A stretch of 64,000 nucleotides of DNA, taken from Salpingoeca rosetta (taxonomy: Eukaryota > Protista > Choanoflagellata). Each line of letters starts with the position of its first letter. The first letter of the stretch is position 1. The stretch covers positions 1,534,076-1,598,075 of the forward strand of contig JAWQFM010000002.1 of assembly GCA_033442325.1 (NCBI GenBank), given 5' to 3'. Shown here piece after piece: positions 3,442 through 25,815 of this stretch. The position numbers and the translations under genes are program-made. The notes beneath the pieces are model-generated. The model searched no databases. It had not been told where the DNA came from and worked only from the letters and a program-made list of their open reading frames with translations.

Positions 3442-4484
3442 ATGGATGCGTCTTCACCGCCACAAACTGCGACGGCGTCACGGGTGGTGGTGACGTATGA
3501 GGACGCGTCGCTGTTTGCGTCTGATGTGGCGCTGCTGGAACCCGGACAGTGGCTGAACGACGCCATTTTCACATTCGCGTTTGAGTACTTTCGACACGGG
3601 CATGCCGAGACCAGGGCAAGGAGCAAGAGCGGCGATGTCGTGTTCGTGGATCCCAGCTCCCTGCAGCTGCTCTTCGCCATGGACGCCGCCTCTGCACGTG
3701 TGGCGCTGCTGGAACCGATTGGGGCAGCCCAGGCCAAGGTCCTCGTCATCCCTGTCAACGATGCCGTCAGTGATGCGCGGCAACCAAACGCTGGCACGCA
3801 TTGGGCCCTGCTGGCAGTGGACACGGAGCAGAGCCGTGCCCTTTACCTCGATTCCATGCCTTCGGCCAGCATGCGCGACCAAGTGGTGACGCCACTCCTG
3901 ACCAGGCTGTCAGCGGCGCTCGGCACGCACAAACGCCTCACGCTGCTGCAGCCGCCATTCCCGAGACAGGCAAATAGCTTTGACTGCGGCATGTACGCAT
4001 TGGCAGCAGCCGAGCATGTTGCTGTCACTGGCCTCAATCCTGAACCTTCCTTCGATTTCTTATCACCAGCCTTCATCTCCGAGCTGCGGCAGCGATGGAA
4101 GGTGTGCATGCGTGTCGTGTGCGTGTGTGTACATGTGAGTGTAGTTGTGTATGTGAGTGAGTGAGTGAGTGTAGTTGTGTATGTGAGTGTGCGAGTGAGT
4201 GAGTGAGTGAGTGAGTGAGTGAGTGAGTGAGTGAGTGAGTGAGTGAGTGAGTGAGTGTAGTTGTGTGTGTGTGTAAGTGAGTGAGTGAGTGAGTGTGTGT
4301 GAGTGAGTGAGTGAGTGAGTGAGTGAGTGAGTGAGTGAGTGAGTGAGTGAGTGAGTGAGTGTGGTGTACATGTGAGTGCACGCACTCACACGTGTGTATG
4401 TGTGCGTTCGTTTCGACATCTTGCTTGTGTTGCCCCCAGGCAATCATCACGGAGACAGCTACGCCTGACAACGGACATAGCTGA
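3442..4484 (+). CDS. SENP8: NEDD8-specific protease SENP8/DEN1/NEDP1 (peptidase C48); exons 3442-4101 and 4440-4484
   Basis: VVVTYEDASLFASDVALLEPGQWLNDAIFTFAFEYF, PVND...AGTHWALL (catalytic His), YLDS, QANSFDCGMY (catalytic Cys). A GT-AG intron leads to a short terminal exon AIITETATPDNGHS*. Confidence 0.9.
4153..4360 (+). repeat. (TGAG)n tetranucleotide microsatellite in SENP8 intron
   Basis: Long, lightly interrupted gagtgagtga array. Confidence 0.95.
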
Positions 4485-5333: not shown

Positions 5334-5705
5334 TTATCTGTTGGAGCGCAGCATGGCCATGAGGGTGGTGACAAAGACGGCAATGGTCAATAGGTAGACG
5401 GGTGCGAGGATGGCGGTGGTTGGTCCTGAAATGTGGCCGTCCGCATGCAGCGGGAGCACCACGTCCACGGCGATCTTCGCTGCGAGCGCGACGATCCTTA
5501 CGAGCCCGTCCTTCCAGGGCGGTCGTGGCCGCTGGCGCACGTACAGCACGAACAGGATGGCCAGGGACAGGTCTTGGATGTACAAGGGCACGCACACGCC
5601 GATCCAGGAGCCAATCAATCCTTTCTGCGACGCCAACACCGCTGCAACCAGCACCAGCAGCAACTCCACCACCACTGTCGCCAACCCCACCCCTTTGCCC
5701 AGCAT
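5334..5705 (-). CDS. Small multi-pass membrane protein, TMEM203/TMEM60/TMEM185-like (123 aa, single exon)
   Basis: About four hydrophobic segments. [32 protein letters not shown]...[11 protein letters not shown]...ILAPVYLL resembles the SW..VF.P...D and K...E.LL...PL pattern of TMEM203 as recalled. Confidence 0.55.
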
Positions 5706-5954
5706 CTCTGCAAGTAGCTGGTTGTCCTTGCGAGCTTCACGATCCCCAGCAACAGCCGCGGCAAGAAAAAAGAGGCTGTGTGGTGTTGTCGGCGTTCAAG
5801 CGTCCCTCAGCCTTTGACACGCTCTCCAACTCCTCTGCCTTCCTTTCCTCTCCTTTCGTTCACTCTCCACACACAAAAATCCACACAAGCAGCAAAGCCA
5901 AGAGACACTGTGCGCGCAACACAGGAAAGACAAGAAGAAGAAGGTGGCGTCACG

Positions 5955-7028
5955 ATGACGGACTTGGCTGCAGCTTCCTCCTCCTCCTCTGCCTCTGCGC
6001 GAGGTGTGGTGGACGTTGGGGACGTGGCGTTACAGGAGCAGGTGCAGGCGACGTTTGTGGACACCCTCCAGGCCAGCATCGATCAAGACACAAACCTGTG
6101 AGCACTGTGGTCCATTTGCACTCGAAAGCTTGGTTGCTCGCTGCTTGTTTGCACCTCCACTCTTGTCCATGGGCTCAACTTGCAGCACACGCTTCGTCGC
6201 GCGTTCACCTCAGCCCCTCCCCTCCCCCTCTTCCTCCTCGTCTTTACATAGGGCACCGGTTGTGATCCAGTTTGAGGTGGGCGATAGGGTGTGGCACATT
6301 GACACGCGCAGCGAAAGTACACCACTGGTTTCCGCCACGCGTCATGCCGAGCCAGGTGTGCATGGCAACGCGACAGGATCATGTGTGCATGTGTGCATGT
6401 GTGCATGTGTGCGTGCGTGCGCGTGTGTATATGTGTATGGGCCGTGGTCTGCGTTGCCTGCTACGTGCCCCAAGCCTGTGTGTCACAGCTACATTTGCCA
6501 ACACACATACACACATGCACTTACACTCACTCACACACCCACACCCACAACCACACACACTCACACACTCGCGAACATCCACACGCACACAACAAATACA
6601 CATACGCACGCACACACATATGCATGCGTACACAGACGCCACGCTGCGATGCAACTTTGACACTCTCAAGGCCATCAGCCAAGGAAAGCTCAAGGTCCCT
6701 GTTGCCATCCTTCGCAACCGCATTCAACTCGAAGGCAGTCGCCAGGTGCGAGCACCATGGATGCCTGATGTCATGCACTTCATGGGATACCCTCTGCACT
6801 TTCCTTGCTCGCCCAGCGAGTCTGACAATGCTGCGCACTGCCCTTTGTTCCCCGTGAGGCGTGCTCGTGCACTACCGCTCGTCTCGTCCTCCCTCACATG
6901 ATTGTTGTGCCCCCCCCCCCGTATTGCTGCCACAACAGGTGGTGATGGGTTACGGTCGCCACGTGCGGCAGGCGTTCCAAGCATGCAAGCCCATCGTTAC
7001 TGGCCAAGTGCCGCTCGCTGCACAGCCA

Positions 7029-7059
<31 letters not shown>

Positions 7060-7904
7060 CACAGCAGCAGAGAGTGCGTGCAGGCAGCACGGCGTCACAG
7101 GCGCGCGCCATGCTGGGAATGGATCGCGGGTTTCGCATGGAGCAGTATCTCGCCAAGACTTGGGTATGTGCATCGTGCGATGTCCTCTGTGGTCCTCTGT
7201 GGTGATGTGTGGTCCTCTGTAGTCCTCTGTGGTCCTCTGTGGTGGTCTGTGGCGTGGAACACGAACAGCCGCTATGACACTGTGATGTGTTCAGCATCGA
7301 TCTGTACGCATGCATCTGCTTGTTACATCAAGAGTGCCTCAAGCCTCTGAATACATGCGATCACGTTTTCACACGCACACACACAGTGCCACATTCAAGC
7401 ACGCGTTTGACTCGCTGACGCTCACTTCCGTTCTGTCACTCCCTCCCTCTCCCTTCCATTCTGTCCCTGTCTCCTTGTCCCCCGGCCACATGCACACGCA
7501 GGTGCCCGACGATGAGCGGTCGACGTGCCTGGAGTGCAAGCAGTCGTTTTCGTTCTTCCGCCGCCGCCACCACTGCCGCGTGTGCGGTGAAGTTTTCTGT
7601 GGAGATTGCTCAAACTTTTACATCATGGACTACCGCGTGTGCGGGCCGTGCCAGCAGAAGGTGCTGGAGGCGCAGCGCACCTACCACTCGCTCATCACAG
7701 ACACGCCGTCCCACACGCCGCCACGCTCGCGCTCAACAACAACAACAACAGCACGGCAGCGGGGTTCCCGCCAGACCACCGCCAGCAACGTCACCCCACC
7801 ACGAGCAGCAGCGCCAGGGCAGCACGCGTCATCTGCTCCCCCGTCCTCATCGTCGCTTTCAGCCTCACTCTCTGCACGCCTGCAAGAGGCCCAATCACAG
7901 CAGC

Positions 7905-7935
<31 letters not shown>

Positions 7936-10900
7936 GCAACAACAGCAGCAGCAGCAACAACAGCAACAAGGGCAGCGGCGACGGGGAAGGGCACAGGGGC
8001 GAGCTGCTGGCACAGCTGAAGCGCGTGCACCAGCAGCAGCCACCATGACAGAAGAACAGCCACAGGCCACCTCGTCATCATCATCGTCGTCGTCGTCACA
8101 GCAAGAGGGGCAAGAGAGAAGTGGGCTTGGCCTGCTGGAAGGGAAGCTGTCTGCTCGCATTCGCAGCATGGAGGAGCGACCTGTCGATGCAAAGACGGCA
8201 GTGGAAACAGCGGCCGCAGTGGCCCGTGCACACCTGAATGAAGGCATTCATCGTGATGGTACCGGCAGTGCTGATACACCGTCTGCGTCCTCGTCGCTTC
8301 GCTCCTCACCAACGCCGTCATCATCGTCGTCGTCGTCATGGCTCTCGTGTTCCCTAGTCTCGTTCTTCGTCCTCTCGGTGGGTATCAGTGTATGAGTGTA
8401 TGGGTATGCGTGTGTGTACATGTGCGTGTGTGTGTGTGCATGTGTGCATGAGTGTATGTGTTTGTGCATGTGTTGTGTACTACATACGTTTGAGTGTCGC
8501 ATGCTGGTTGTGATGCTGTACGCGCATGTACACATTTGCAGTGGGGGTATGCGTGTCGCCTCCACCAGCCAACATGCTGACATCGTCCAACTCATGTCAA
8601 CCCAACTCTTCCTTCCGTTTCCGATGCCCCCCACTGTATCTTCCTTTCTTGCCTGCTTGTTAGGTTGGGGTGGTCGCTGGTGTTTTGTCTACCTACGCCA
8701 TCGACATGCCAGCACTTCCGTCCTCCCTGCCATCCCTGCCATCCCTTCCAACGCAGCAAGAAGCGCTGGACATGGCGTCCGAGACCGGACACGCTGTCCT
8801 CAATGCCGCGACCGCTTCTCGCGCATGGCAGTTCATGATGCAATATCCCTTGTACATTGCCGGCACCGCATGCGGGCTGGTGCTCCTGGGCGTGCTGAAC
8901 AGACGCCGCCTTGCTCTCCTTCGTCGCCAGGCCGTGGTCTACTATACATCCACCGTTGTCATCTCCCGCATCCTGCTGCTGAAATACTGGTCAAAGTACT
9001 TTCCAGTCTCCGAGGAAGTGGAGGAGGAGCAGTGGAACCGTCTCCACGAAGCAAACGCACGCCGCGTCCAGGTATGCTTGTGTGTTTGTGCGCGTGTGTT
9101 TGCGCGCGTGTGTTTGTGCGTTCTTGTGTTTGTGCATCAGCGTGTTTGCGTGTGTGTACATGCTCGTGCTGACGTGTTGTGATCCAACTGCGTGCGAATC
9201 CAAACACGTGCTTTCCAGTGGCTGCCTATCTTGCCGCTTTCTCACATCATCATGCTCTCCTCCTCCTCCTCCTCACCACCACCACCTCCTCCTCCTCCTC
9301 CTCACCACCACCACCACCACCACCACCACCACCACCATCAACCAGCTGCTGGCGCGGCGGCTGCGCGGGTTTTGGGTGAAGGTGGGGCAGTACCTGTCCT
9401 CACGCGGCGATGTGATGCCGGAGCCCTGGGTCCGCGAGCTTCGCTCCCTCCAGGTCTTGCAGATGCACACACGCGTGCATGCATGCATGCATGATGCTCG
9501 TGCGAGGTGGCAATGGAGGATTGATAGGTTTTTTTTTGAAGGGGGGGGGGAGGCGAGGGAGCGAGGGTGCAATTGTATGTATGCGTGTGTATGCGTGTGT
9601 ATGTGCATGCGGGTTCTTGATGTACCTGTCATGCGTGCGGATTCCACCTCCTCAACATTGGCTTCAACAGCACCTCGTTTGCATTTCGATCCTTTCATTC
9701 CCATCCGTCGTCACATCACCTCACACCCGTTTCCTTATCATGCCAACACCTCACCCTGCCTCCCCCCTATTCCTGTTTCAACCACCTTCCACCTCTCTTC
9801 CTCTCTTCGACTGCAGGACACGATGCCGTTCCAGCCGTTTGCGGACGTGAAAGCGATTGTGGAGGAGGATCTTGGCCACCCGCTCACAGAGCTCTTCTCC
9901 TCGTTTGAAGAACTCCCAATTGCATCAGCAAGTATCGCGCAGGTGCACATTGCCACACTCAAGCGCAGCAAGCACCAGGTGCGTGCATTTGCCTGCGTAT
10001 GCGTGCGCGTGTGTGTGCCATCGTTGAGGCTTGTGTAGCTGCAGGTGGCTCTGATGAAGGCATGTATCATGTGTTCCTGTCACTCTGTTTCGTTGATGTC
10101 GTGGAGGAGGGGGGGGGGTGTTCAACGCTCATCCACACGTCCACACATCCACACCTGTGTCCTGTCGTGCAGGTGGTGGTGAAAGTGCAGCACAAAAACA
10201 TTGACCGCATCATGAAGCAGGACCTCAAGAATCTCTTTGTCATCGTCTCATGGTGTGGTGCTGTGCGATACTGTGTGTGTCTAAGTGTGCGTATCTGTGT
10301 GTGTCTCTCTGTGTGTGTGTGTGTCCGTGTGTGTGTGTGTGTGTCTGTGTGTTTGTGCGTGTGTGTGTGTGATTACTTGTCACCCTTTTCGACTTGACCC
10401 TTCGGTCTCATCGACCTTCTTCCCCCTCCCCAACCCGAACAAACAGGGTGGCGTATCTTGAGCCGCAGTATGATTTTCGGCCTGTGCTGGAGGAGTGGGC
10501 CAAGGTCGCCATCAAGGAGCTCGACTTCAAACACGAGGCCGCAAACATGCAGCGTGTGCGCAACAATCTCCTCAAAACGCATTTAGATGTCATTGTGCCC
10601 AAACTGGAGGAGGGCCTCTTCTCCAACCGCGTGATTGTGATGGAGTACTGCGAGGGCTTCAAGGTGACGGACACGGATCTTCTTGACGCGCACGACATTG
10701 ACCGCGAATCGCTCATGCGTCGCATCTGCCAAGCATATGCGCACCAAGTGTATGTTGACGGCTTCTTCAACTGCGATCCGCATCCAGGTATGGTCGCCGG
10801 TGCTGTACTGCTGGTCCTGACGGAGGTGTCGTGTGGTATGCAGCGAACACGGCGCTCTTCTGCGTTTTGCACAACGTTGTTTCGTTCGTTGTGCTTGGTT

Positions 10901-13900
10901 GATTGCTGTCGTGCGTGCGCGCGTGCTCGGGTGTTTACACGCGTGTATCCTGTTGTCTATACCAGTTGGTCAGACCTCACTCCTTCATCTCACTCCTCAG
11001 TATCACTCCTTCACCTCACTCCTTCACCTTACTCCTCAACCTCATTCCTTCACCTCACTCCTTACATTCGTTCCCCCTCCCCCTACTTCCCTTAACACAT
11101 TCACCCCTACCATATCTCGTCGCCCACATTCAACGTGCTTGCAGGCAACATCCTGGTCCAGGTGCGCGACGGCAAGGCGTACCCGGTGCTGCTTGACTAC
11201 GGCATGTGCCGGCAGCTGCCCGAGGAGAAGAAGCGGGCCTTTGCCGCCATGATCTACGCAGCGACCACCATGGACTTTGGCACGCTGCTGTGGAGTTTTG
11301 ACGAGATGGGCCTGAAACTGAAGCGGGACGACCCGTTTGAGGACATGAAGAACATTCGCTTTGTGCTGCGTGACACAGCGCCTGGCGCAGAGATGCGCAG
11401 AGACTTCAAGAAGTTTCGCGAGGACGTGTGGCAGAAGCGCCAGCAGCTGCCGCGCAGCCAGCGAAACCCGGTCGAGGCGTGGCCGCCGGAGCTGCTGTTC
11501 TTCTTCCGCGTGACCCTGCTTCTGCGTGGCCTGTGCGCTGTGCTTGGCGTGCGCATGCGCTACTCGCTCGTGCTGGCCCCATACGCCCACCTCGCCCTCA
11601 TCCGATCCTACAACCGCTCCCTGCACGCCACGCACGCCGTCACCGCTGCGCCCATCCACACCGACACCAGTCAAGACACAACCGCCACGAACACCACCAC
11701 CGCAGGCGGTGTGCCACCATCATCGCCACCGCCGTCGGCGCCACTGTCGCGCGTGCGGCTGGTGCGCATGGCTGCCAGTCCGCAGCGAGCGGTGATGGAG
11801 GTGCTGCAGGAGCTGTACAGCGAGGGCCTCATCACAGGCATCCAGGTTGCCGCCTACCACCAAGGACAGTGCGTCGTGAACGCATGTGCGGGGACAATGG
11901 GAGCGGCGGACCCGCGGGCCGTCACGCCGAGCACGCTCTTCAACTGCTTCTCCGTGATGAAGGGCGTGACGGCGACGGCGCTGCACGTGCTCGCCGACCA
12001 GCGGCTTCTGCAGTACAGCGATCGCGTTGGTGCACACTGGCCCGAGTACGCGTGCAACGGCAAGGAGGAGACGACCATCTACAACGTGCTTACCCACTCT
12101 GCTGGGCTGCACCGCTTCCCCGGCCTCAAGCTGAACCTGAAGCAGGTGTGCGACTGGCACACGATGCAGAAGCACATACAGGAGGCGGCAGCAGAGACAC
12201 CACCAGGCACGCTCGCCCGCTACCACATCCTGTCGTTTGGGTGGATTGTTGCCGGCATCATTGAGCGGGTGACGCGCGGGCAGCCGTTCAGCGAATTCCT
12301 TCGTCAGCGCATCGCTGCTCCGCTCGGCATTGAGGTGTGTGGTGGTGGACAGGTGGAGAGAGAAGTTGGTCGGGGCTGCGAGTGTGTGGTTGCAATCGGC
12401 GTGTACGTGTGTGTGCATGACTGTGTTGCAACCACAGCGTGTGCTTGTTTTGGGTTGTCTGTATGTATTGCATTGGGTAAACCACGCGTGTGGCGGGAAG
12501 ATGTTGACACGTGTGTGTGTGTGTTTGATATCGCGCGTCTTGCACTCATCTGCGTGCCTGACCCTCATCTGCGTGTGCTGCTGTGCACTGGTGATGGTTG
12601 TGCCAGGACGAGTTTATGATTGGCGTCGACATGGATGATGAGCGCATCTGCGACCGACTCGCCACACTCTGCAACGGGTGCGACTGTTTTTGCTGTTATT
12701 TGCATGGGATACAGTCGTGTGTTGTGTTGCAGTCTTTGGGGATGGTGCACAGGTTTTGGTGTCGGGTTGCTGGTTCCCATTGCGGCTCCTCGTCTTTCCC
12801 ACGCCGTACCTAACAACATGTCTCGCACATCACCACCACCACCACCACGATCACGACGATCAACTGCCACGATCACCTCCACGACACCACGACACCACCT
12901 CCATGTTCACAACACCACGACTACCAACAACAGGTTCTTTGCGACGGAGGATGGCGAGCCACCGAGCGAGGAGGACGTGAAGCGGCTGCTGGCACAGCTG
13001 CGGCGCGCCGACCTGCCACAGCAGCGCCACGAGACGCCAGGGGCGGGCGATGTCGTGCTGGTGAACGGAACAACAAGGAGCGGGCGGCGTGTGCCCACCG
13101 TTGCGCACGTGAGTGGTGAAGACGCAGAAGACGCACAAGAGGTAGAGGAGGAGGGTGCTGGTGATGCTGAAGGCGCGGCAGGAGGGGAGAAGCATGAGGA
13201 CGAAGCAGAAGAACAGCGCGACGGCGATGAGGATGAGGATGAGGATGAGGATGAGGAGGAAGAGGATGAGGAGGAGGATGAGGAGGAAGAGGACACGAGT
13301 GCTGTTGCAGCATCGGTACCACGCCACCCAGATGCGTGGCCGCCTGTTCTCAACCAGCAGCCGCACCGCTACGACGCGCTTGTGGAGAAGACGCGTACGG
13401 AGGTGATGAAGGAAATGGACAGCACAACAGACGGATGGGGCCTTGTCAAGACGTCATCAGACGTTGAGATCTGGAAGAAAAAGGTGGGTTACAATGTGTG
13501 TGTGTGTGTGTGTGTGTGCGTGTGTGTGTGTGTGTGGCAATGTGTGTGTGGCAATGTGTGTGTGTGTGGGGGGGGGGGCAATGCGTGTGTGTGTGTGTCA
13601 ATGTGAATGTGTGTGCGAGTGAGTCTCATGGACACGGTTCATTGTCGACACTCGATCCCTCATTCTTCCCGCCCTCATCCTGCAATGTTCCCATTGTCAC
13701 ACCTGTCTTTAGATCCAGGACAGCCCGTTGGTGATGGTTCGGGGCGTGGGCGTGATTGAGCGCCACCCAGCCGTTCTCTTCAAGATTCTGACGCAGGTGG
13801 ACCAGAAGCCGCTGTGGAACAAGGACTTTGCCTGCCTGGACGAGGTTGAAGTGTTTGATGACTGCACAAAGGTTCGTGTTGCGTCTGCATACGTGTATTT

Positions 13901-14335
13901 TGCGTATGTGAGCTGGTGTGGAAGAATGTGTGTTTGTATATGAATCTGTGAATGTATTGTGGATGTGTTGTGCAGGTGTGCAGCATGCCTCTGCACGGGC
14001 TGACGCGAGACTGCGATGCGTGTGGTGTGCTTCAGGTGATCCGTGATGAGTACAAGCCCATCTGGCCGGTCTCTGGGCGCGACATGTGCTTCGTGCAGTC
14101 CCTTCGTCTCCTGGACAACGGCGGCTTCTTCATGGTCAGCAAGAGCGTCGAGCACCCAGACTGCCCGCCCAAATCGGGGTGAGTCGTGCGAGAGGCGGTG
14201 TGGTGTGGAACATATGTGGAACATGTGTGTTTTGGTGTGTGTGCGTGTGCCGTGCCGTTATGCACGCATGTGTGGTTGAGGAGAGGCTCGTCAACAATAT
14301 GTGGTGATCTTACCACTTTCCTTGCGCACTCCCCT

Positions 14336-14391
<56 letters not shown>

Positions 14392-15038
14392 CTCACACAC
14401 TCTCTCATGCGCGTGTGGAAACCCAACATGTCTGTCAGTGTTGTGCGAGCGGAGGGTTTGGGTGGCATGCGCGTTGTGCCCTTCCCCAACGATCCCAACA
14501 AGTGCACCGTCACATACCTCACTGCTGTCGACCCAAAGGTGTGTGTCGGGTGTGTGTGCATTGTACGTGTTTTCATGTTTTGTGTGTGTGTGTGTGTTTT
14601 GCTTAGTGTGTGTGTTTGTGCGTGTTTGTGCGTGTGCGTGTGTGTGTTTGTGCGTGTGTGTGTTTGTGCGTGTGTGTGTTTGTGCGTTGTGTTTGTTAGT
14701 TTGATTTCAAGTTGCATTTGGATTTTGATACTTTAATCACATCAGGCACCTATCTTCCTCACTTTCCCCCACAATACCATCCTTGTCCCTCCCACGCACA
14801 CATGCAAACACAACTTGGCAGGGCAATGTTCCGACGATGGTGGTCAACGTCGTTGCGACCAACCAGCCGCTGTGTGTGGCGGCGATTCGCAAGCTTGCCA
14901 TGTCGCGCCCACAGTACACGCCGCCGCCAGAGCCAACCCCGCCACCAACTCCACAGCAGAAGAAGAGAGCACCACGCAAGCAGGGAAGCAAGCAGGCACT
15001 GAAGAAGACGAAAGCCAGGAAGCAGCAGACGACGGGGA

Positions 15039-15069
<31 letters not shown>

Positions 15070-15402
15070 GAAGGCGCAGAAGAGAGGTGCCGTGAAAGAA
15101 GCTAGTAACCACGCAGCAGCAGCAGCAGCACGCACACGATCAGGGAATGAGCAAGCATCAGCTGTGCCTGCTGCCACTACACATCAACAGCAACAAGCAG
15201 AACAACCAGAAGACGAGGAATTGGACGCCAGCAAGATGATTCTGCTGGACCCGTGCATGTACAACACACGACAGGTGGGTTGGCGTTAGCGTTGGCGTTG
15301 GCGTTGGCGCACTGACACGCGAGACGCCTGCATCTGCATTACACTTGCTCATGCACGAAATGACACAATTGATCCGACCGCCATTGCAAGCTGCTTGATG
15401 TT

Positions 15403-15475
<73 letters not shown>

Positions 15476-15713
15476 CAGTTGCGGCAAGCGGTGATCCCCT
15501 CAGCCAACGGCCACTTCTCTGCGCGTGCGCTTGCCAAGTTCTACGCCGTGCTCGCCAACAACGGCCGACTTGGGTCGTTTCAACTGCTGCAGCCAGAGAC
15601 TGTTGCCACCATGTCAAAGGTTCGCTTGCTTATTGTGTGCATGGAACTCCTGCACGGTACAGAAATGGTGGCGTTGTTGTATCCACCACCCTGTCGGCCT
15701 TACACACGTGCTT

Positions 15714-15779
<66 letters not shown>

Positions 15780-16379
15780 CTGTAAATGAATGAGTGCGAA
15801 TGTGATCGGTGTGTGTGCGTGCGTGTGTGTGTGTGTGAAAATCAGAGTGTCTCACGACGCATTCCTGATGCTTTTTTTGTGTTTCGATTCCCTGAACAGA
15901 CGCAGCCCATTGAGACGCCGTTCATGCAAGGCATGCGCGTGCGCTGGGGTCTTGGCTACCAAAAGTACAGGTACGTGTATGTATATGTGTGTGTGTATGA
16001 TTGTACGTCTTTGGCTTTGTTACTGTTGCGTTTGTTTTGTTGCTGTGTTCATCCTGTGGTTGACCTGCTTCCTTCCTTTTGTTCCCCTTCCATTTGCGCT
16101 TGTCGCGACTTTATCTGCGCCACCTCACACCACCCCTCCTCCCTTCTCTACAACGCTGCAATCCCTCATCTTCTCCACAGGATGAAGCGGGACGGGCGTG
16201 TGTTGGACACGCCGTTTGGCCACGTCGGGCTTGGCGGCAGTGCAGCGTTTTGCGATCCACACACCAACACGTCCTTTGCCATTACCGTGAATCGTTTGCA
16301 GCTGGATAAGGAGGTTGCCGAGCGTGTCCTTGACGCCATCACGGATGCGTTGCAGATTGGCCAAGTCGACCTCATGTGA
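5955..16379 (+). CDS. Multidomain protein: SCP2 - FYVE - TM - ABC1/UbiB (ADCK/ABC1K) kinase - beta-lactamase-fold serine hydrolase split by a START domain; 20 exons, ~1,877 aa
   Basis: Exons: 5955-6097, 6252-6355, 6636-6745, 6939-7163, 7502-8377, 8664-9071, 9346-9453, 9817-9978, 10173-10252, 10447-10787, 11145-12334, 12607-12677, 12934-13483, 13713-13871, 14036-14178, 14439-14538, 14822-15274, 15479-15619, 15900-15970, 16181-16379. All introns are GT-AG with compatible phases and the total is 5,634 nt. Domain motifs are given in the sub-features. Confidence 0.85.
6030..6990 (+). other. SCP2 (sterol carrier protein 2)-like lipid-binding domain
   Basis: [14 protein letters not shown]...[37 protein letters not shown] fits the SCP2 consensus (W.iD...pD.ti......f..l..Gkl....A....klki.G). 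Confidence 0.75.
7155..7665 (+). other. FYVE zinc finger (PI3P-binding)
   Basis: W|VPD (WxxD), [26 protein letters not shown]. All three FYVE signature motifs and eight Cys are present. Confidence 0.95.
9030..11600 (+). other. ABC1/UbiB/ADCK atypical protein kinase-like domain
   Basis: KVGQ (KxGQ), LQD, A-rich loop [46 protein letters not shown]. Confidence 0.95.
11780..12677 (+). other. Beta-lactamase-related serine hydrolase (class C / family VIII esterase fold), N-terminal part
   Basis: [23 protein letters not shown] (SxxK at 11951-11962), [33 protein letters not shown] (catalytic Tyr ~12221), IAAPLGI. Lies in the same exon as the end of the kinase. Confidence 0.92.
13370..14900 (+). other. 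START (StAR-related lipid transfer) domain
   Basis: [88 protein letters not shown]: a complete START consensus. Confidence 0.93.
15240..16379 (+). other. Beta-lactamase-related serine hydrolase, C-terminal part
   Basis: [54 protein letters not shown]...FAITVN. Confidence 0.9.
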
Positions 16380-16931
16380 TGTGTGCGTATGTTGTGTGTA
16401 TGTCGTGTGTGTGTGTGTGTCGTGTGTGTGCATGTGAGTGTGGTGTGTGCATGTGTGTACGTGTGTGTTGTGCGTGGCATGTGTGTGTTGTGCGTGCACG
16501 TGAGTGTGCGTGGCATGAAGTGTGGGCGTGCACACCAACCTGTGTTCCTCATCTCTCATTCGTAGATTCGATGCACATTTAGAGCACCCGTTTTCAAAAG
16601 TTTGCTGTGTTGCATTGCCAATAAAACAACATCAAATTCATCTTGCCAATTTTTTATTTGCCAACGCGCACAGTCCGCGCTTTCTGACCACGCTGCCACA
16701 CAACCACACACAACAACTCGACGACGACCGCATGCACTGGCCGCTGCATCCCCCTCCACAACAAGCAGCACATTCGCTCACTCAACCGGTCTCTCGACGA
16801 GCCGGAGACAGCAACGGCTGCAACAGCTACAACAGCTGCAGTATCTGCAGCAACATCCTGAGCGGCAAAAGCGCCATTTCCCAAGGCGCAGACACAAGCC
16901 ACAAGCAAAACCTGTGACGGCCAAGGCATTC

Positions 16932-25815
<8,884 letters not shown>

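What the first reader, a model, noticed from the sequence alone, without database searches (positions are those of the whole stretch)
6030..9000. UbiB-family kinase apparently retargeted from organelles to endosome/phagosome
Seen: in place of a transit peptide, the N-terminus has SCP2, a canonical FYVE (WxxD, RRHHCR, RVC) and two hydrophobic segments (about 8340-8700 and 8845-8900) before the KxGQ domain. Established: characterised eukaryotic ABC1K/ADCK proteins are mitochondrial or plastidial, and FYVE binds endosomal PI3P. Inference: an endomembrane or contact-site UbiB kinase would be a new setting for this family; TM + FYVE + START resembles a membrane-contact lipid-transfer tether.
Basis: partly seen in the sequence, partly recalled or inferred. 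Interest (0 to 1): 0.7.

Follow-up and report, generated by a model that had tools for sequence, protein, structure and literature searches.

The report
Phosphoinositide-targeted, membrane-anchored UbiB kinase-like protein
A choanoflagellate gene joins a UbiB/ABC1 kinase-like enzyme, a family otherwise known only from mitochondria and plastids, to a lipid-carrier domain, a canonical PI3P-binding FYVE finger and a two-helix membrane anchor. Relatives across eukaryotes carry FYVE, PX or PH at that same position, so this branch of the family probably works on endosome-type membranes, though nobody has looked.

Summary
Window 5955-16379 (+) reads as one 20-exon GT-AG gene of 1897 codons with consistent phases. 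In order it encodes an SCP2-like N-terminus, a canonical FYVE finger, a roughly 215-residue low-complexity linker, two hydrophobic helices, an intact UbiB/ABC1 domain, and an S12 (beta-lactamase-fold) hydrolase with a nested START domain.

Complete transcript-derived ORFs from three other choanoflagellates have the same order. The SCP2-FYVE-two-helix-ABC1-S12 form also occurs in Capsaspora, an ichthyosporean, stramenopiles, Chromera and the green alga Cymbomonas. The core is the ABC1-S12 fusion known in plants as ABC1K11.

The new point concerns the position after SCP2. Among 32 long N-termini of this clade it holds FYVE in 17, PX in 5 and PH in 1. This supports phosphoinositide-directed membrane targeting.

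The N-termini are acidic and do not look like presequences.

Limits:
- Localisation is untested.
- The feature is ancient, not a choanoflagellate invention.
- SCP2 is shown here only indirectly.

I found no paper that describes a FYVE- or PX-UbiB protein. The scan has noted this same gene under two other headings, on this DNA only.

The parts
5955..6097 (+). Exon 1: start codon and the N-terminal helix region of the SCP2-like domain. The first 30 residues have net charge -3.
   Evidence: Sequence reading. No in-frame ATG lies between the upstream stop at about 5778 and 5955. Charge.
6252..6355 (+). Exon 2: SCP2-like, [16 protein letters not shown]...
   Evidence: GT-AG splice sites with a consistent phase. 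Weak colinear match to the orthologue SCP2 profile, positions 28-53.
6636..6745 (+). Exon 3: SCP2-like C-terminal part, [36 protein letters not shown].
   Evidence: Best of 20 exon pieces against the orthologue SCP2 profile: 14.4 bits, positions 67-103.
6939..7163 (+). Exon 4: poly-Q linker. Its last codon is the W of the FYVE WxxD motif (7161-7163).
   Evidence: The orthologue P0001 has a contiguous VWVPDDD across this junction.
7502..7663 (+). FYVE zinc finger at the start of exon 5: VPD, eight Cys, an SFF membrane-insertion (turret) loop, RRRHHCR and RVC.
   Evidence: Pfam FYVE E 1.1e-13. PDB matches to endofin at 7e-12, RUFY1, EEA1, Hrs and Vps27.
7664..8338 (+). Low-complexity Ser/Thr/Gln-rich linker within exon 5, about 225 residues, between FYVE and the first helix.
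   Evidence: Continuous open frame.
8339..8377 (+). First half of hydrophobic helix 1, at the end of exon 5: [13 protein letters not shown].
   Evidence: Kyte-Doolittle 1.83 over 13 residues.
8664..8702 (+). Second half of hydrophobic helix 1, at the start of exon 6: [13 protein letters not shown].
   Evidence: Kyte-Doolittle 1.93. Phase-0 junction with exon 5.
8826..8897 (+). Hydrophobic helix 2: [24 protein letters not shown].
   Evidence: Kyte-Doolittle 2.09. The same pair of helices is found in the orthologues.
8901..9071 (+). Basic cluster RRRLALLRR and the conserved UbiB N-terminal extension. The short plant form begins at the equivalent place.
   Evidence: plant N-termini read MGWGNTITRRLKVF... 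and similar.
9346..11650 (+). UbiB/ABC1 kinase-like domain, exons 7-11. It carries KVGQ (9379-9390), [31 protein letters not shown] (across intron 10) and LLDYG.
   Evidence: Pfam ABC1 in consecutive profile order. These are invariant columns of the clade. The clade profile hits solved UbiB-family structures and COQ8A/B.
11780..16379 (+). S12/beta-lactamase-fold hydrolase (SVMK) with the START domain nested in it, exons 11-20, with the stop at 16377-16379. It belongs to the same reading frame chain and is the subject of another finding.
   Evidence: Pfam Beta-lactamase 5e-39. START pieces at profile 43-85 and 90-139. The exons abut one another on orthologue P0001.

Best explanation
**Shown.** This is one gene for one membrane protein of 1897 residues. 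It belongs to the ABC1-S12 (plant ABC1K11-type) clade of the UbiB family, in that clade's long form. Its N-terminus carries a lipid-carrier domain (SCP2-like) and a phosphoinositide reader (a canonical PI3P-type FYVE).

**Inferred: topology.**
- The FYVE and SCP2 domains lie in the cytosol.
- The two hydrophobic helices form a hairpin anchor. The basic RRRLALLRR flank after helix 2 also lies on the cytosolic side.
- The UbiB domain begins within about ten residues of the membrane and faces the cytosol.

**Inferred: place.** The FYVE finger sits on a linker of about 215 residues. It holds the protein on PI3P-positive endosomal or food-vacuole membranes. Alternatively it bridges from the anchoring membrane, possibly the ER, to such membranes.

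**Inferred by analogy: activity.** The analogy is with COQ8, Cqd1 and Cqd2. The catalytically intact UbiB domain would use ATP to handle a membrane isoprenoid lipid such as a quinone. SCP2 and START would act as carriers, and the S12 hydrolase would act as a lipid-ester-processing module.
For: **Gene model.** There are 20 exons, all GT-AG, with consistent phases and no stop. Successive exons abut on the transcript-derived orthologue P0001, for example at 516|517, 570|571 and 1111|1112.

**Same order in other species.** Complete transcriptome ORFs of Salpingoeca infusionum, Savillea parva and Didymoeca costata have the same domain order. So do proteins of Capsaspora, Chromosphaera, Chattonella, Scytosiphon, Cymbomonas and Chromera.

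**FYVE.** It is canonical.

**The position after SCP2.** It holds FYVE in 17, PX in 5 and PH in 1 of 32 long N-termini. The PX domains carry KRYSDF or KRFSDF, plus PPKR. FYVE-bearing and PX-bearing members are scattered over the quick tree.

**Helix pair.** It is conserved.

**N-termini.** They are acidic, with net charge -6 to +3 and mostly negative or near zero, against +4 to +7 in the short plant forms.

**Catalytic residues.** All residues invariant in the clade's UbiB domain are present.

**Expression.** Eight runs from two studies hold 0.47-0.54 of the sampled words of 5700-11699. That equals the exon share of about 0.47-0.52. It would be about 0.25 if exons 1-5 were silent.

**Literature.** UbiB proteins as extractors and distributors of CoQ: PMC8346625. 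TM-anchored PI3P readers as tethers: PMC9692390.
Against: - There is no localisation data for any member of the clade. Plant ABC1K11 is called mitochondrial in the literature, apparently by clade assignment (PMC7288548, PMC11625579).
- Helix 2 with its basic flank resembles a mitochondrial signal-anchor.
- I have no direct splice evidence from this organism.
- In some orthologues the third FYVE motif is RAC, RMC or RSC instead of RVC.
- The PX forms P0191 and P0201 have only weak hydrophobic segments.
- No FFAT-like motif points to an ER partner.
- The substrate is unknown.
Confidence: 0.55

Rival explanations
1. The hairpin sits in the mitochondrial outer membrane, with all domains facing the cytosol. 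The FYVE finger then ties mitochondria to PI3P-positive endosomes. The protein would be a mitochondrion-endosome contact enzyme that passes quinones or other lipids out of the organelle where they are made.
For: Helix 2 is moderately hydrophobic and is followed by RRRLALLRR, which is typical of signal-anchors. All characterised relatives work at mitochondria or plastids, and CoQ must leave mitochondria (PMC8346625). Cqd1 itself forms a contact site (PMC10214851). The long linker suits binding to a second membrane.
Against: There is no presequence. The helices lie more than 750 residues from the N-terminus, behind two folded domains. Nothing in the sequence singles out mitochondria over the ER or the endosome itself. 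The PX forms with weak hydrophobic segments suggest that the phosphoinositide reader alone can place the protein.
Confidence: 0.2
2. The protein is a conventional mitochondrial inner-membrane or intermembrane-space UbiB protein. Its FYVE and SCP2 domains serve something other than PI3P-membrane targeting.
For: The family precedent is mitochondrial: COQ8, Cqd1 and Cqd2 (PMC8346625). Plant ABC1K11 is grouped with the mitochondrial ABC1Ks (PMC7288548).
Against: The N-terminus is acidic, with a folded SCP2-like domain and a zinc finger ahead of the helices. All PI3P-binding motifs are kept. FYVE is exchanged for PX or PH in relatives, and all three read cytosolic-leaflet phosphoinositides.
Confidence: 0.07
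3. The model is an artefact. Exons 1-5 (SCP2 and FYVE) would be a separate upstream gene, and the kinase gene would start at or near exon 6.
For: There are no splice-spanning reads from this organism. The word search found no protein of this organism. Short forms starting just after helix 2 exist in plants.
Against: Helix 1 and the WxxD motif exist only after the predicted splices. There is no stop or start signal between the parts. Complete transcript ORFs of three other choanoflagellates join them. The share of words in the probable RNA assemblies fits all exons being expressed.
Confidence: 0.04

Closest known systems
Plant ABC1K11 (At5g24810) and other ABC1-S12 (beta-lactamase) fusion proteins
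   Same: They have the same core: a UbiB/ABC1 domain followed by an S12 serine-hydrolase domain. They are 37-39% identical to the choanoflagellate orthologue P0001 over the core, residues 480-1110. The ABC1-S12 architecture of At5g24810 is described in PMC1560137, and the name ABC1K11 is given in PMC11368760.
   Different: The plant forms are about 930-1010 residues long and begin just before the UbiB N-terminal extension with a basic N-terminus. They have no SCP2, FYVE or hydrophobic helix pair, and Pfam records no START for them. They are uncharacterised apart from a salt/ROS phenotype (PMC7288548).
Mitochondrial UbiB proteins COQ8/ADCK3-4, Cqd1/ADCK2 and Cqd2 (Mcp2)/ADCK1-5
   Same: They share the UbiB fold and its invariant residues: KxGQ, the Ala-rich loop, Lys, Glu, DPHPGN and DxG. 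The clade profile hits COQ8A at E 5e-30. These proteins are membrane-apposed and are proposed to couple ATPase activity to lipid or quinone extraction (PMC8346625).
   Different: Those proteins lie inside mitochondria, on the matrix or intermembrane-space face of the inner membrane. They have no phosphoinositide reader, lipid-carrier domain or hydrolase domain. The genome has separate ABC1 loci, one with an HCDPHPGN motif.
TM-anchored phosphoinositide readers at contact sites: protrudin (FYVE) and SNX13/14/19/25, Mdm1 (PX)
   Same: They have membrane-spanning helices plus a FYVE or PX domain that reaches PI3P-bearing endolysosomal membranes, and they are linked to lipid transfer (PMC9692390).
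   Different: There is no homology outside the FYVE or PX domain. They carry no enzyme of the UbiB or S12 kind. Protrudin's FYVE is C-terminal and atypical. This is a resemblance in design, not membership.
Canonical endosomal FYVE domains (EEA1, Hrs/Vps27, endofin, RUFY1)
   Same: WxxD, R(R/K)HHCR, RVC and eight zinc-binding Cys are all present, with a hydrophobic membrane-insertion (turret) loop, SFF.
   Different: There is a deletion of five to six residues between the CS and RVC elements. There is no adjoining coiled coil, and binding has not been measured.

Membership tests
UbiB / ABC1 / ADCK atypical kinase-like family | A Pfam ABC1 (PF03109) match over the curated cut-off. | tested here: met
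   The exon pieces score 55.4 and 95.8 bits, plus two weaker pieces, in consecutive profile order 1-55, 56-85, 87-198 and 195-237. Orthologue P0001 scores 231 bits.
UbiB / ABC1 / ADCK atypical kinase-like family | The KxGQ motif, the Ala-rich loop, the catalytic Lys, the Glu, the DPHPGN loop and the DxG. | tested here: met
   [35 protein letters not shown] and LLDYG are read. Each is an invariant column in the clade alignment A1.
UbiB / ABC1 / ADCK atypical kinase-like family | Similarity to solved UbiB folds. | tested here: met
   The clade profile hits 5yjz at 1e-37, 7cy2 at 3e-36 and COQ8A (4ped) at 5e-30. Single exons of the window gave no hit.
ABC1-S12 fusion clade (plant ABC1K11 type) | ABC1 is followed in the same chain by a PF00144 domain with SxxK. 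| tested here: met
   ABC1 positions 195-237 and Beta-lactamase at 5e-39 lie in one uninterrupted exon, exon 11, with SVMK. Exon 11 groups within a choanoflagellate clade of this family in the quick tree, with SH-aLRT 97-99.
PI3P-binding FYVE domain | WxxD, R(R/K)HHCR, RVC and eight Cys. | tested here: met
   W|VPD across intron 4, RRRHHCR and RVC are present. Pfam gives 1.1e-13.
PI3P-binding FYVE domain | Binding of PI3P and recruitment to endosomes. | not testable with these tools
   This needs liposome or overlay assays and imaging with VPS34 inhibition.
SCP2 sterol/lipid carrier domain | A Pfam SCP2 (PF02036) match. | tested here: inconclusive
   No match was found on exons 1-3 taken singly, and the joined sequence was not searched, by instruction. 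The orthologues match at 2.5e-8 to 1.3e-10. The orthologue profile picks exons 3 and 2 in colinear order.
Mitochondrial presequence-bearing ADCK | An N-terminal basic, acid-free amphipathic presequence. | tested here: not met
   The first 30 residues have net charge -3 with four acidic residues. Orthologues range from -6 to +3, and transcript-derived ORFs marked complete start at the SCP2 helix. This is a crude measure; TargetP and MitoFates were not available.
Integral membrane protein (helical hairpin) | Two hydrophobic stretches long enough to span a bilayer. | tested here: met
   The stretches are 26 and 24 residues long, with Kyte-Doolittle values of 1.8-2.1. The pair is conserved in the orthologues. 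Topology was not tested.

The most novel reading that the evidence does not exclude
The ABC1-S12 clade, plant ABC1K11 included, would be an ancient extramitochondrial arm of the UbiB family. Phosphoinositides (FYVE, PX or PH) would recruit it to endolysosomal or food-vacuole membranes or their contact sites. There, together with its built-in SCP2 and START carriers, it would extract and move isoprenoid quinones such as CoQ between membranes. That would make it a missing component of non-mitochondrial CoQ distribution or of CoQ salvage from ingested material.
Probability: 0.2. Interest if true: 0.85.

Novelty: new variant of a known kind. Interest (0 to 1): 0.62.

Why it matters
How coenzyme Q and related lipids reach membranes outside mitochondria is an open question. 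The only UbiB proteins so far tied to it, Cqd1 and Cqd2, sit inside mitochondria (PMC8346625).

This clade differs in three ways. It is anchored in a membrane, it carries its own lipid-carrier domains, and it is addressed by interchangeable phosphoinositide readers. If the inference is right, it would put this enzyme family on the cytosolic face of endomembranes.

The idea can be tested in Salpingoeca rosetta, Capsaspora and, for the short form, Arabidopsis. The FYVE/PX/PH exchange at one position is also a clean comparative argument for the function of that position.

Tried and rejected
- **Laying RNA reads.** There is therefore no direct splice evidence.
- **Word search with exon 5.** It found only two close relatives, 83% and 73% identical over the FYVE exon, and no protein of this organism.
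- **Pfam on the short SCP2 exons.** Nothing was found.
- **phmmer of ABC1 exons against PDB.** Nothing was found; a clade profile was needed.
- **FFAT-like motif scan.** No motif was found.
- **Linker motif.** A short conserved motif in the linker, [18 protein letters not shown], is shared with the close relative P0273 but was not found in the wider clade.
- **Lundquist 2012 review.** It is not held in the library.
- **Tree.** The careful tree did not finish. Only the quick tree was used, so the scatter of FYVE and PX forms is indicative and not proof of independent gains.
- **Literature.** Searches combining UbiB, ABC1 or aarF with FYVE, PX, SCP2 or START gave no relevant paper.
- **Phagosome-specific reading.** I set it aside as unsupported, because brown algae and Chromera carry the FYVE form.
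- **Joined protein.** The spliced protein was not built, searched or folded.
Full report
**What is in the sequence**

Reading 5700-16700 on the + strand gives one chain of 20 exons. All have GT-AG borders and matching phases:

5955-6097, 6252-6355, 6636-6745, 6939-7163, 7502-8377, 8664-9071, 9346-9453, 9817-9978, 10173-10252, 10447-10787, 11145-12334, 12607-12677, 12934-13483, 13713-13871, 13976-14178, 14439-14538, 14822-15274, 15479-15619, 15900-15970 and 16181-16379.

The exons sum to 5694 nt, or 1897 codons before the stop. The introns are full of (TG)n/(CA)n runs.

The flanking genes are both on the + strand and unrelated. Upstream lies a Ulp1/C48 peptidase at 3445-4110. Downstream lies a large acidic protein with an SNF2 domain. 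The gene borders are therefore plausible.

- **FYVE.** Pfam FYVE scores E 1.1e-13 at nt 7502-7663.
  - The W of WxxD is the last codon of exon 4, and VPD opens exon 5, so the motif needs the predicted splice.
  - RRRHHCR, RVC and eight Cys follow.
  - The closest solved chains are the PI3P-binding FYVE domains of endofin, RUFY1, EEA1, Hrs and Vps27, with a gap of five to six residues before RVC.
- **First hydrophobic segment.** It is split by intron 5: [13 protein letters not shown] at 8339-8377 and [13 protein letters not shown] at 8664-8702.
- **Second hydrophobic segment.** It lies at 8826-8897 and is followed by RRRLALLRR.
- **KxGQ and the kinase-like domain.** KVGQ is at 9379-9390. The ABC1 profile is covered in order by exons 8-11.
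- **Catalytic residues.** The clade's invariant residues are all present: KxGQ, ASIAQVH, the Lys of VVVKVQH, ELDF..E, DPHPGN and DxG. The clade profile finds solved UbiB folds, including COQ8A and COQ8B.
- **SCP2.** This is the one weak item.
  - Its three exons are too short for Pfam when taken singly.
  - A profile of the orthologues' SCP2 regions picks exon 3 (14.4 bits) and then exon 2 (weak), in colinear order, out of 20 exon pieces.

**Is it one gene?**

I could not lay reads. I sent nothing from those places to any search tool afterwards.

The indirect evidence is good.

- Consecutive window exons abut without gaps on P0001, at 516|517, 570|571, 710|712 and 1111|1112.
- P0001 is a TransDecoder ORF marked complete, from the transcriptome of Salpingoeca infusionum.
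- P0001, Savillea parva P0160 and Didymoeca costata P0003 are all transcriptome ORFs. All three carry FYVE, ABC1, START and beta-lactamase in this order, and the first two also hit Pfam SCP2.
- Eight sequencing runs from two studies hold 0.47-0.54 of the sampled words of 5700-11699.
  - That is the exon share of the stretch, about 0.47-0.52.
  - Exons 6-11 alone would give about 0.25.
  - The tool only guesses that these runs are RNA.

A 55.4-Mb assembly and S. infusionum as the nearest relative fit that.

**What family it belongs to**

The core, ABC1 followed by an S12/beta-lactamase domain, is a widespread eukaryotic clade.

- Land plants and green algae have a short form of about 930-1010 residues. 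It is 37-39% identical to the choanoflagellate orthologue P0001 over the core.
- In Arabidopsis this is At5g24810. Its ABC1-S12 architecture was noted in PMC1560137, and it is named ABC1K11 (PMC11368760).
- ABC1K11 is listed among mitochondrial ABC1Ks without a localisation experiment that I could find (PMC7288548, PMC11625579).

The long form, with SCP2 (where detected), FYVE, the helix pair, ABC1 and S12, is not a choanoflagellate peculiarity. It occurs in:

- Capsaspora (P0162)
- the ichthyosporean Chromosphaera (P0007)
- the raphidophyte Chattonella (P0010/P0151)
- the brown alga Scytosiphon (P0166)
- the prasinophyte Cymbomonas (P0136)
- Chromera velia (P0297)
- many environmental sequences

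START is nested in the hydrolase only in the choanoflagellate group.

The genome has at least three other ABC1 loci. One of them carries an HCDPHPGN catalytic loop. This gene is therefore an extra paralogue, not the organism's only UbiB protein.

**The comparative argument for the function of the N-terminus**

I took 32 clade members whose KxGQ lies beyond residue 230 and scanned their N-termini.

| Domain | Members with it (of 32) |
|---|---|
| FYVE | 17 |
| SCP2 | 12 |
| PX | 5 |
| PH | 1 |

- Where SCP2 and PX or PH occur together (P0034, P0095, P0129), the PX or PH sits directly after SCP2, exactly where FYVE sits elsewhere.
- The PX domains carry KRYSDF or KRFSDF, plus PPKR and ERK. This is the pattern I recall for PI3P-binding PX domains; that reading rests on memory and was not tested.
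- In a quick tree of the exon-11 region, FYVE-bearing members are scattered over all major branches, and PX appears in at least two places. The support there is modest and the careful search did not finish.

One position filled by three unrelated phosphoinositide-reading folds is hard to explain unless reading a phosphoinositide is what that position is for.

- The helix pair between this position and the UbiB domain is likewise conserved. It is weak in two PX forms.
- The N-termini are acidic or near neutral, where the short plant forms are basic.

**How it most likely works**

- **Shown:** the domain order, the intact motifs, and their conservation.
- **Inferred: topology.**
  - FYVE, PX and PH all read cytosolic leaflets, so the N-terminal part is cytosolic.
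  - Two helices then return the chain to the cytosol, and the basic flank after helix 2 agrees with that.
  - The UbiB N-terminal extension starts right after helix 2, where the plant proteins begin. The active domain is therefore held at the membrane surface, facing the cytosol.
- **Inferred: place.** The linker of about 215 residues would let FYVE bind the same membrane or a neighbouring one. The design resembles ER-anchored PI3P readers such as protrudin and SNX13/14/19, which tether endolysosomes and act in lipid transfer (PMC9692390).
- **By analogy only: activity.**
  - COQ8, Cqd1 and Cqd2 are thought to couple ATP use to extraction or deposition of CoQ-type lipids (PMC8346625). The UbiB domain here may do the same on an endomembrane.
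  - SCP2 and START would be the carriers. The closest solved START domains are CERT and STARD10, matched through the orthologue.
  - The hydrolase would be a processing step.
- **Open:** which membrane holds the anchor.

**Rivals**

- An outer-mitochondrial-membrane anchor with FYVE bridging to endosomes is the serious rival (0.2).
- A classical intramitochondrial location is unlikely, given the N-terminus and the FYVE/PX/PH exchange (0.07).
- A two-gene artefact is unlikely (0.04).

**Novelty**

The architecture is visible in public protein sets. Capsaspora's protein is named 'ABC1 family protein', and those of Cymbomonas and Chromera are named 'FYVE-type domain-containing protein'.

Five full-text searches found no paper that discusses a UbiB protein with FYVE, PX, SCP2 or START. 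I rate it a new variant of a known kind.

The design and the likely phosphoinositide targeting stand and are now better founded. 'Retargeted' should be read as an old, clade-wide feature. 'Phagosome' is not specifically supported. Localisation remains to be shown.

The scan has notes on this same gene under two other titles, both on this same DNA.

Noticed in passing
P0034, P0095, P0017, P0191, P0201 (PX); P0129 (PH): Relatives of this protein carry a PX or PH domain in the exact position where this gene has FYVE. In three of them it sits directly after an SCP2 domain. The organisms are unknown; the sequences come from metagenome or Logan contigs.
   Followed up: partly
P0078 (1814 aa, environmental): One ABC1-S12 relative has an N-terminus of ASH/Cep192/CFAP65-type Ig-like domains, which are typical of ciliary and centrosomal proteins, instead of SCP2-FYVE. 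Another, P0164, has a PDZ domain.
   Followed up: no
window 8132-8185: A short helix-like motif in the FYVE-to-helix linker, [18 protein letters not shown], is kept in the close relative P0273 (LLESRLLGRIRGM...). It was not found in more distant orthologues. It may be a lineage-specific binding or amphipathic element.
   Followed up: partly
G000:C1:3027586-3028754, G000:C35:457367-458902, G000:C15:1432016-1434394: There are three further ABC1/UbiB loci in the same genome. The C1 locus has IKLGQ and HCDPHPGN motifs; from memory I read it as ADCK1-like, and that was not tested.
   Followed up: partly
window 3445-4110 (+) and about 16950-21500 (+): The neighbours are a Ulp1/C48 peptidase gene upstream and a very acidic protein of more than 1700 residues with an SNF2-related domain downstream. 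Both lie on the same strand, and neither has an evident link to lipid metabolism.
   Followed up: partly
window introns, e.g. 10260-10370, 13490-13600, 14340-14390, 15400-15475, 15705-15780: Almost every intron of this gene holds long (TG)n/(CA)n microsatellites. One such stretch in intron 2 (6376-6436) made the reads tool refuse the region.
   Followed up: no
plant short forms P0181, P0260, P0187, P0193: The plant ABC1K11-type proteins start with a basic amphipathic stretch, for example MGWGNTITRRLKVF... It aligns with the segment just after helix 2 of this gene. Whether it acts as a presequence or as a membrane-binding helix is untested, and their assumed mitochondrial location deserves a check.
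   Followed up: no
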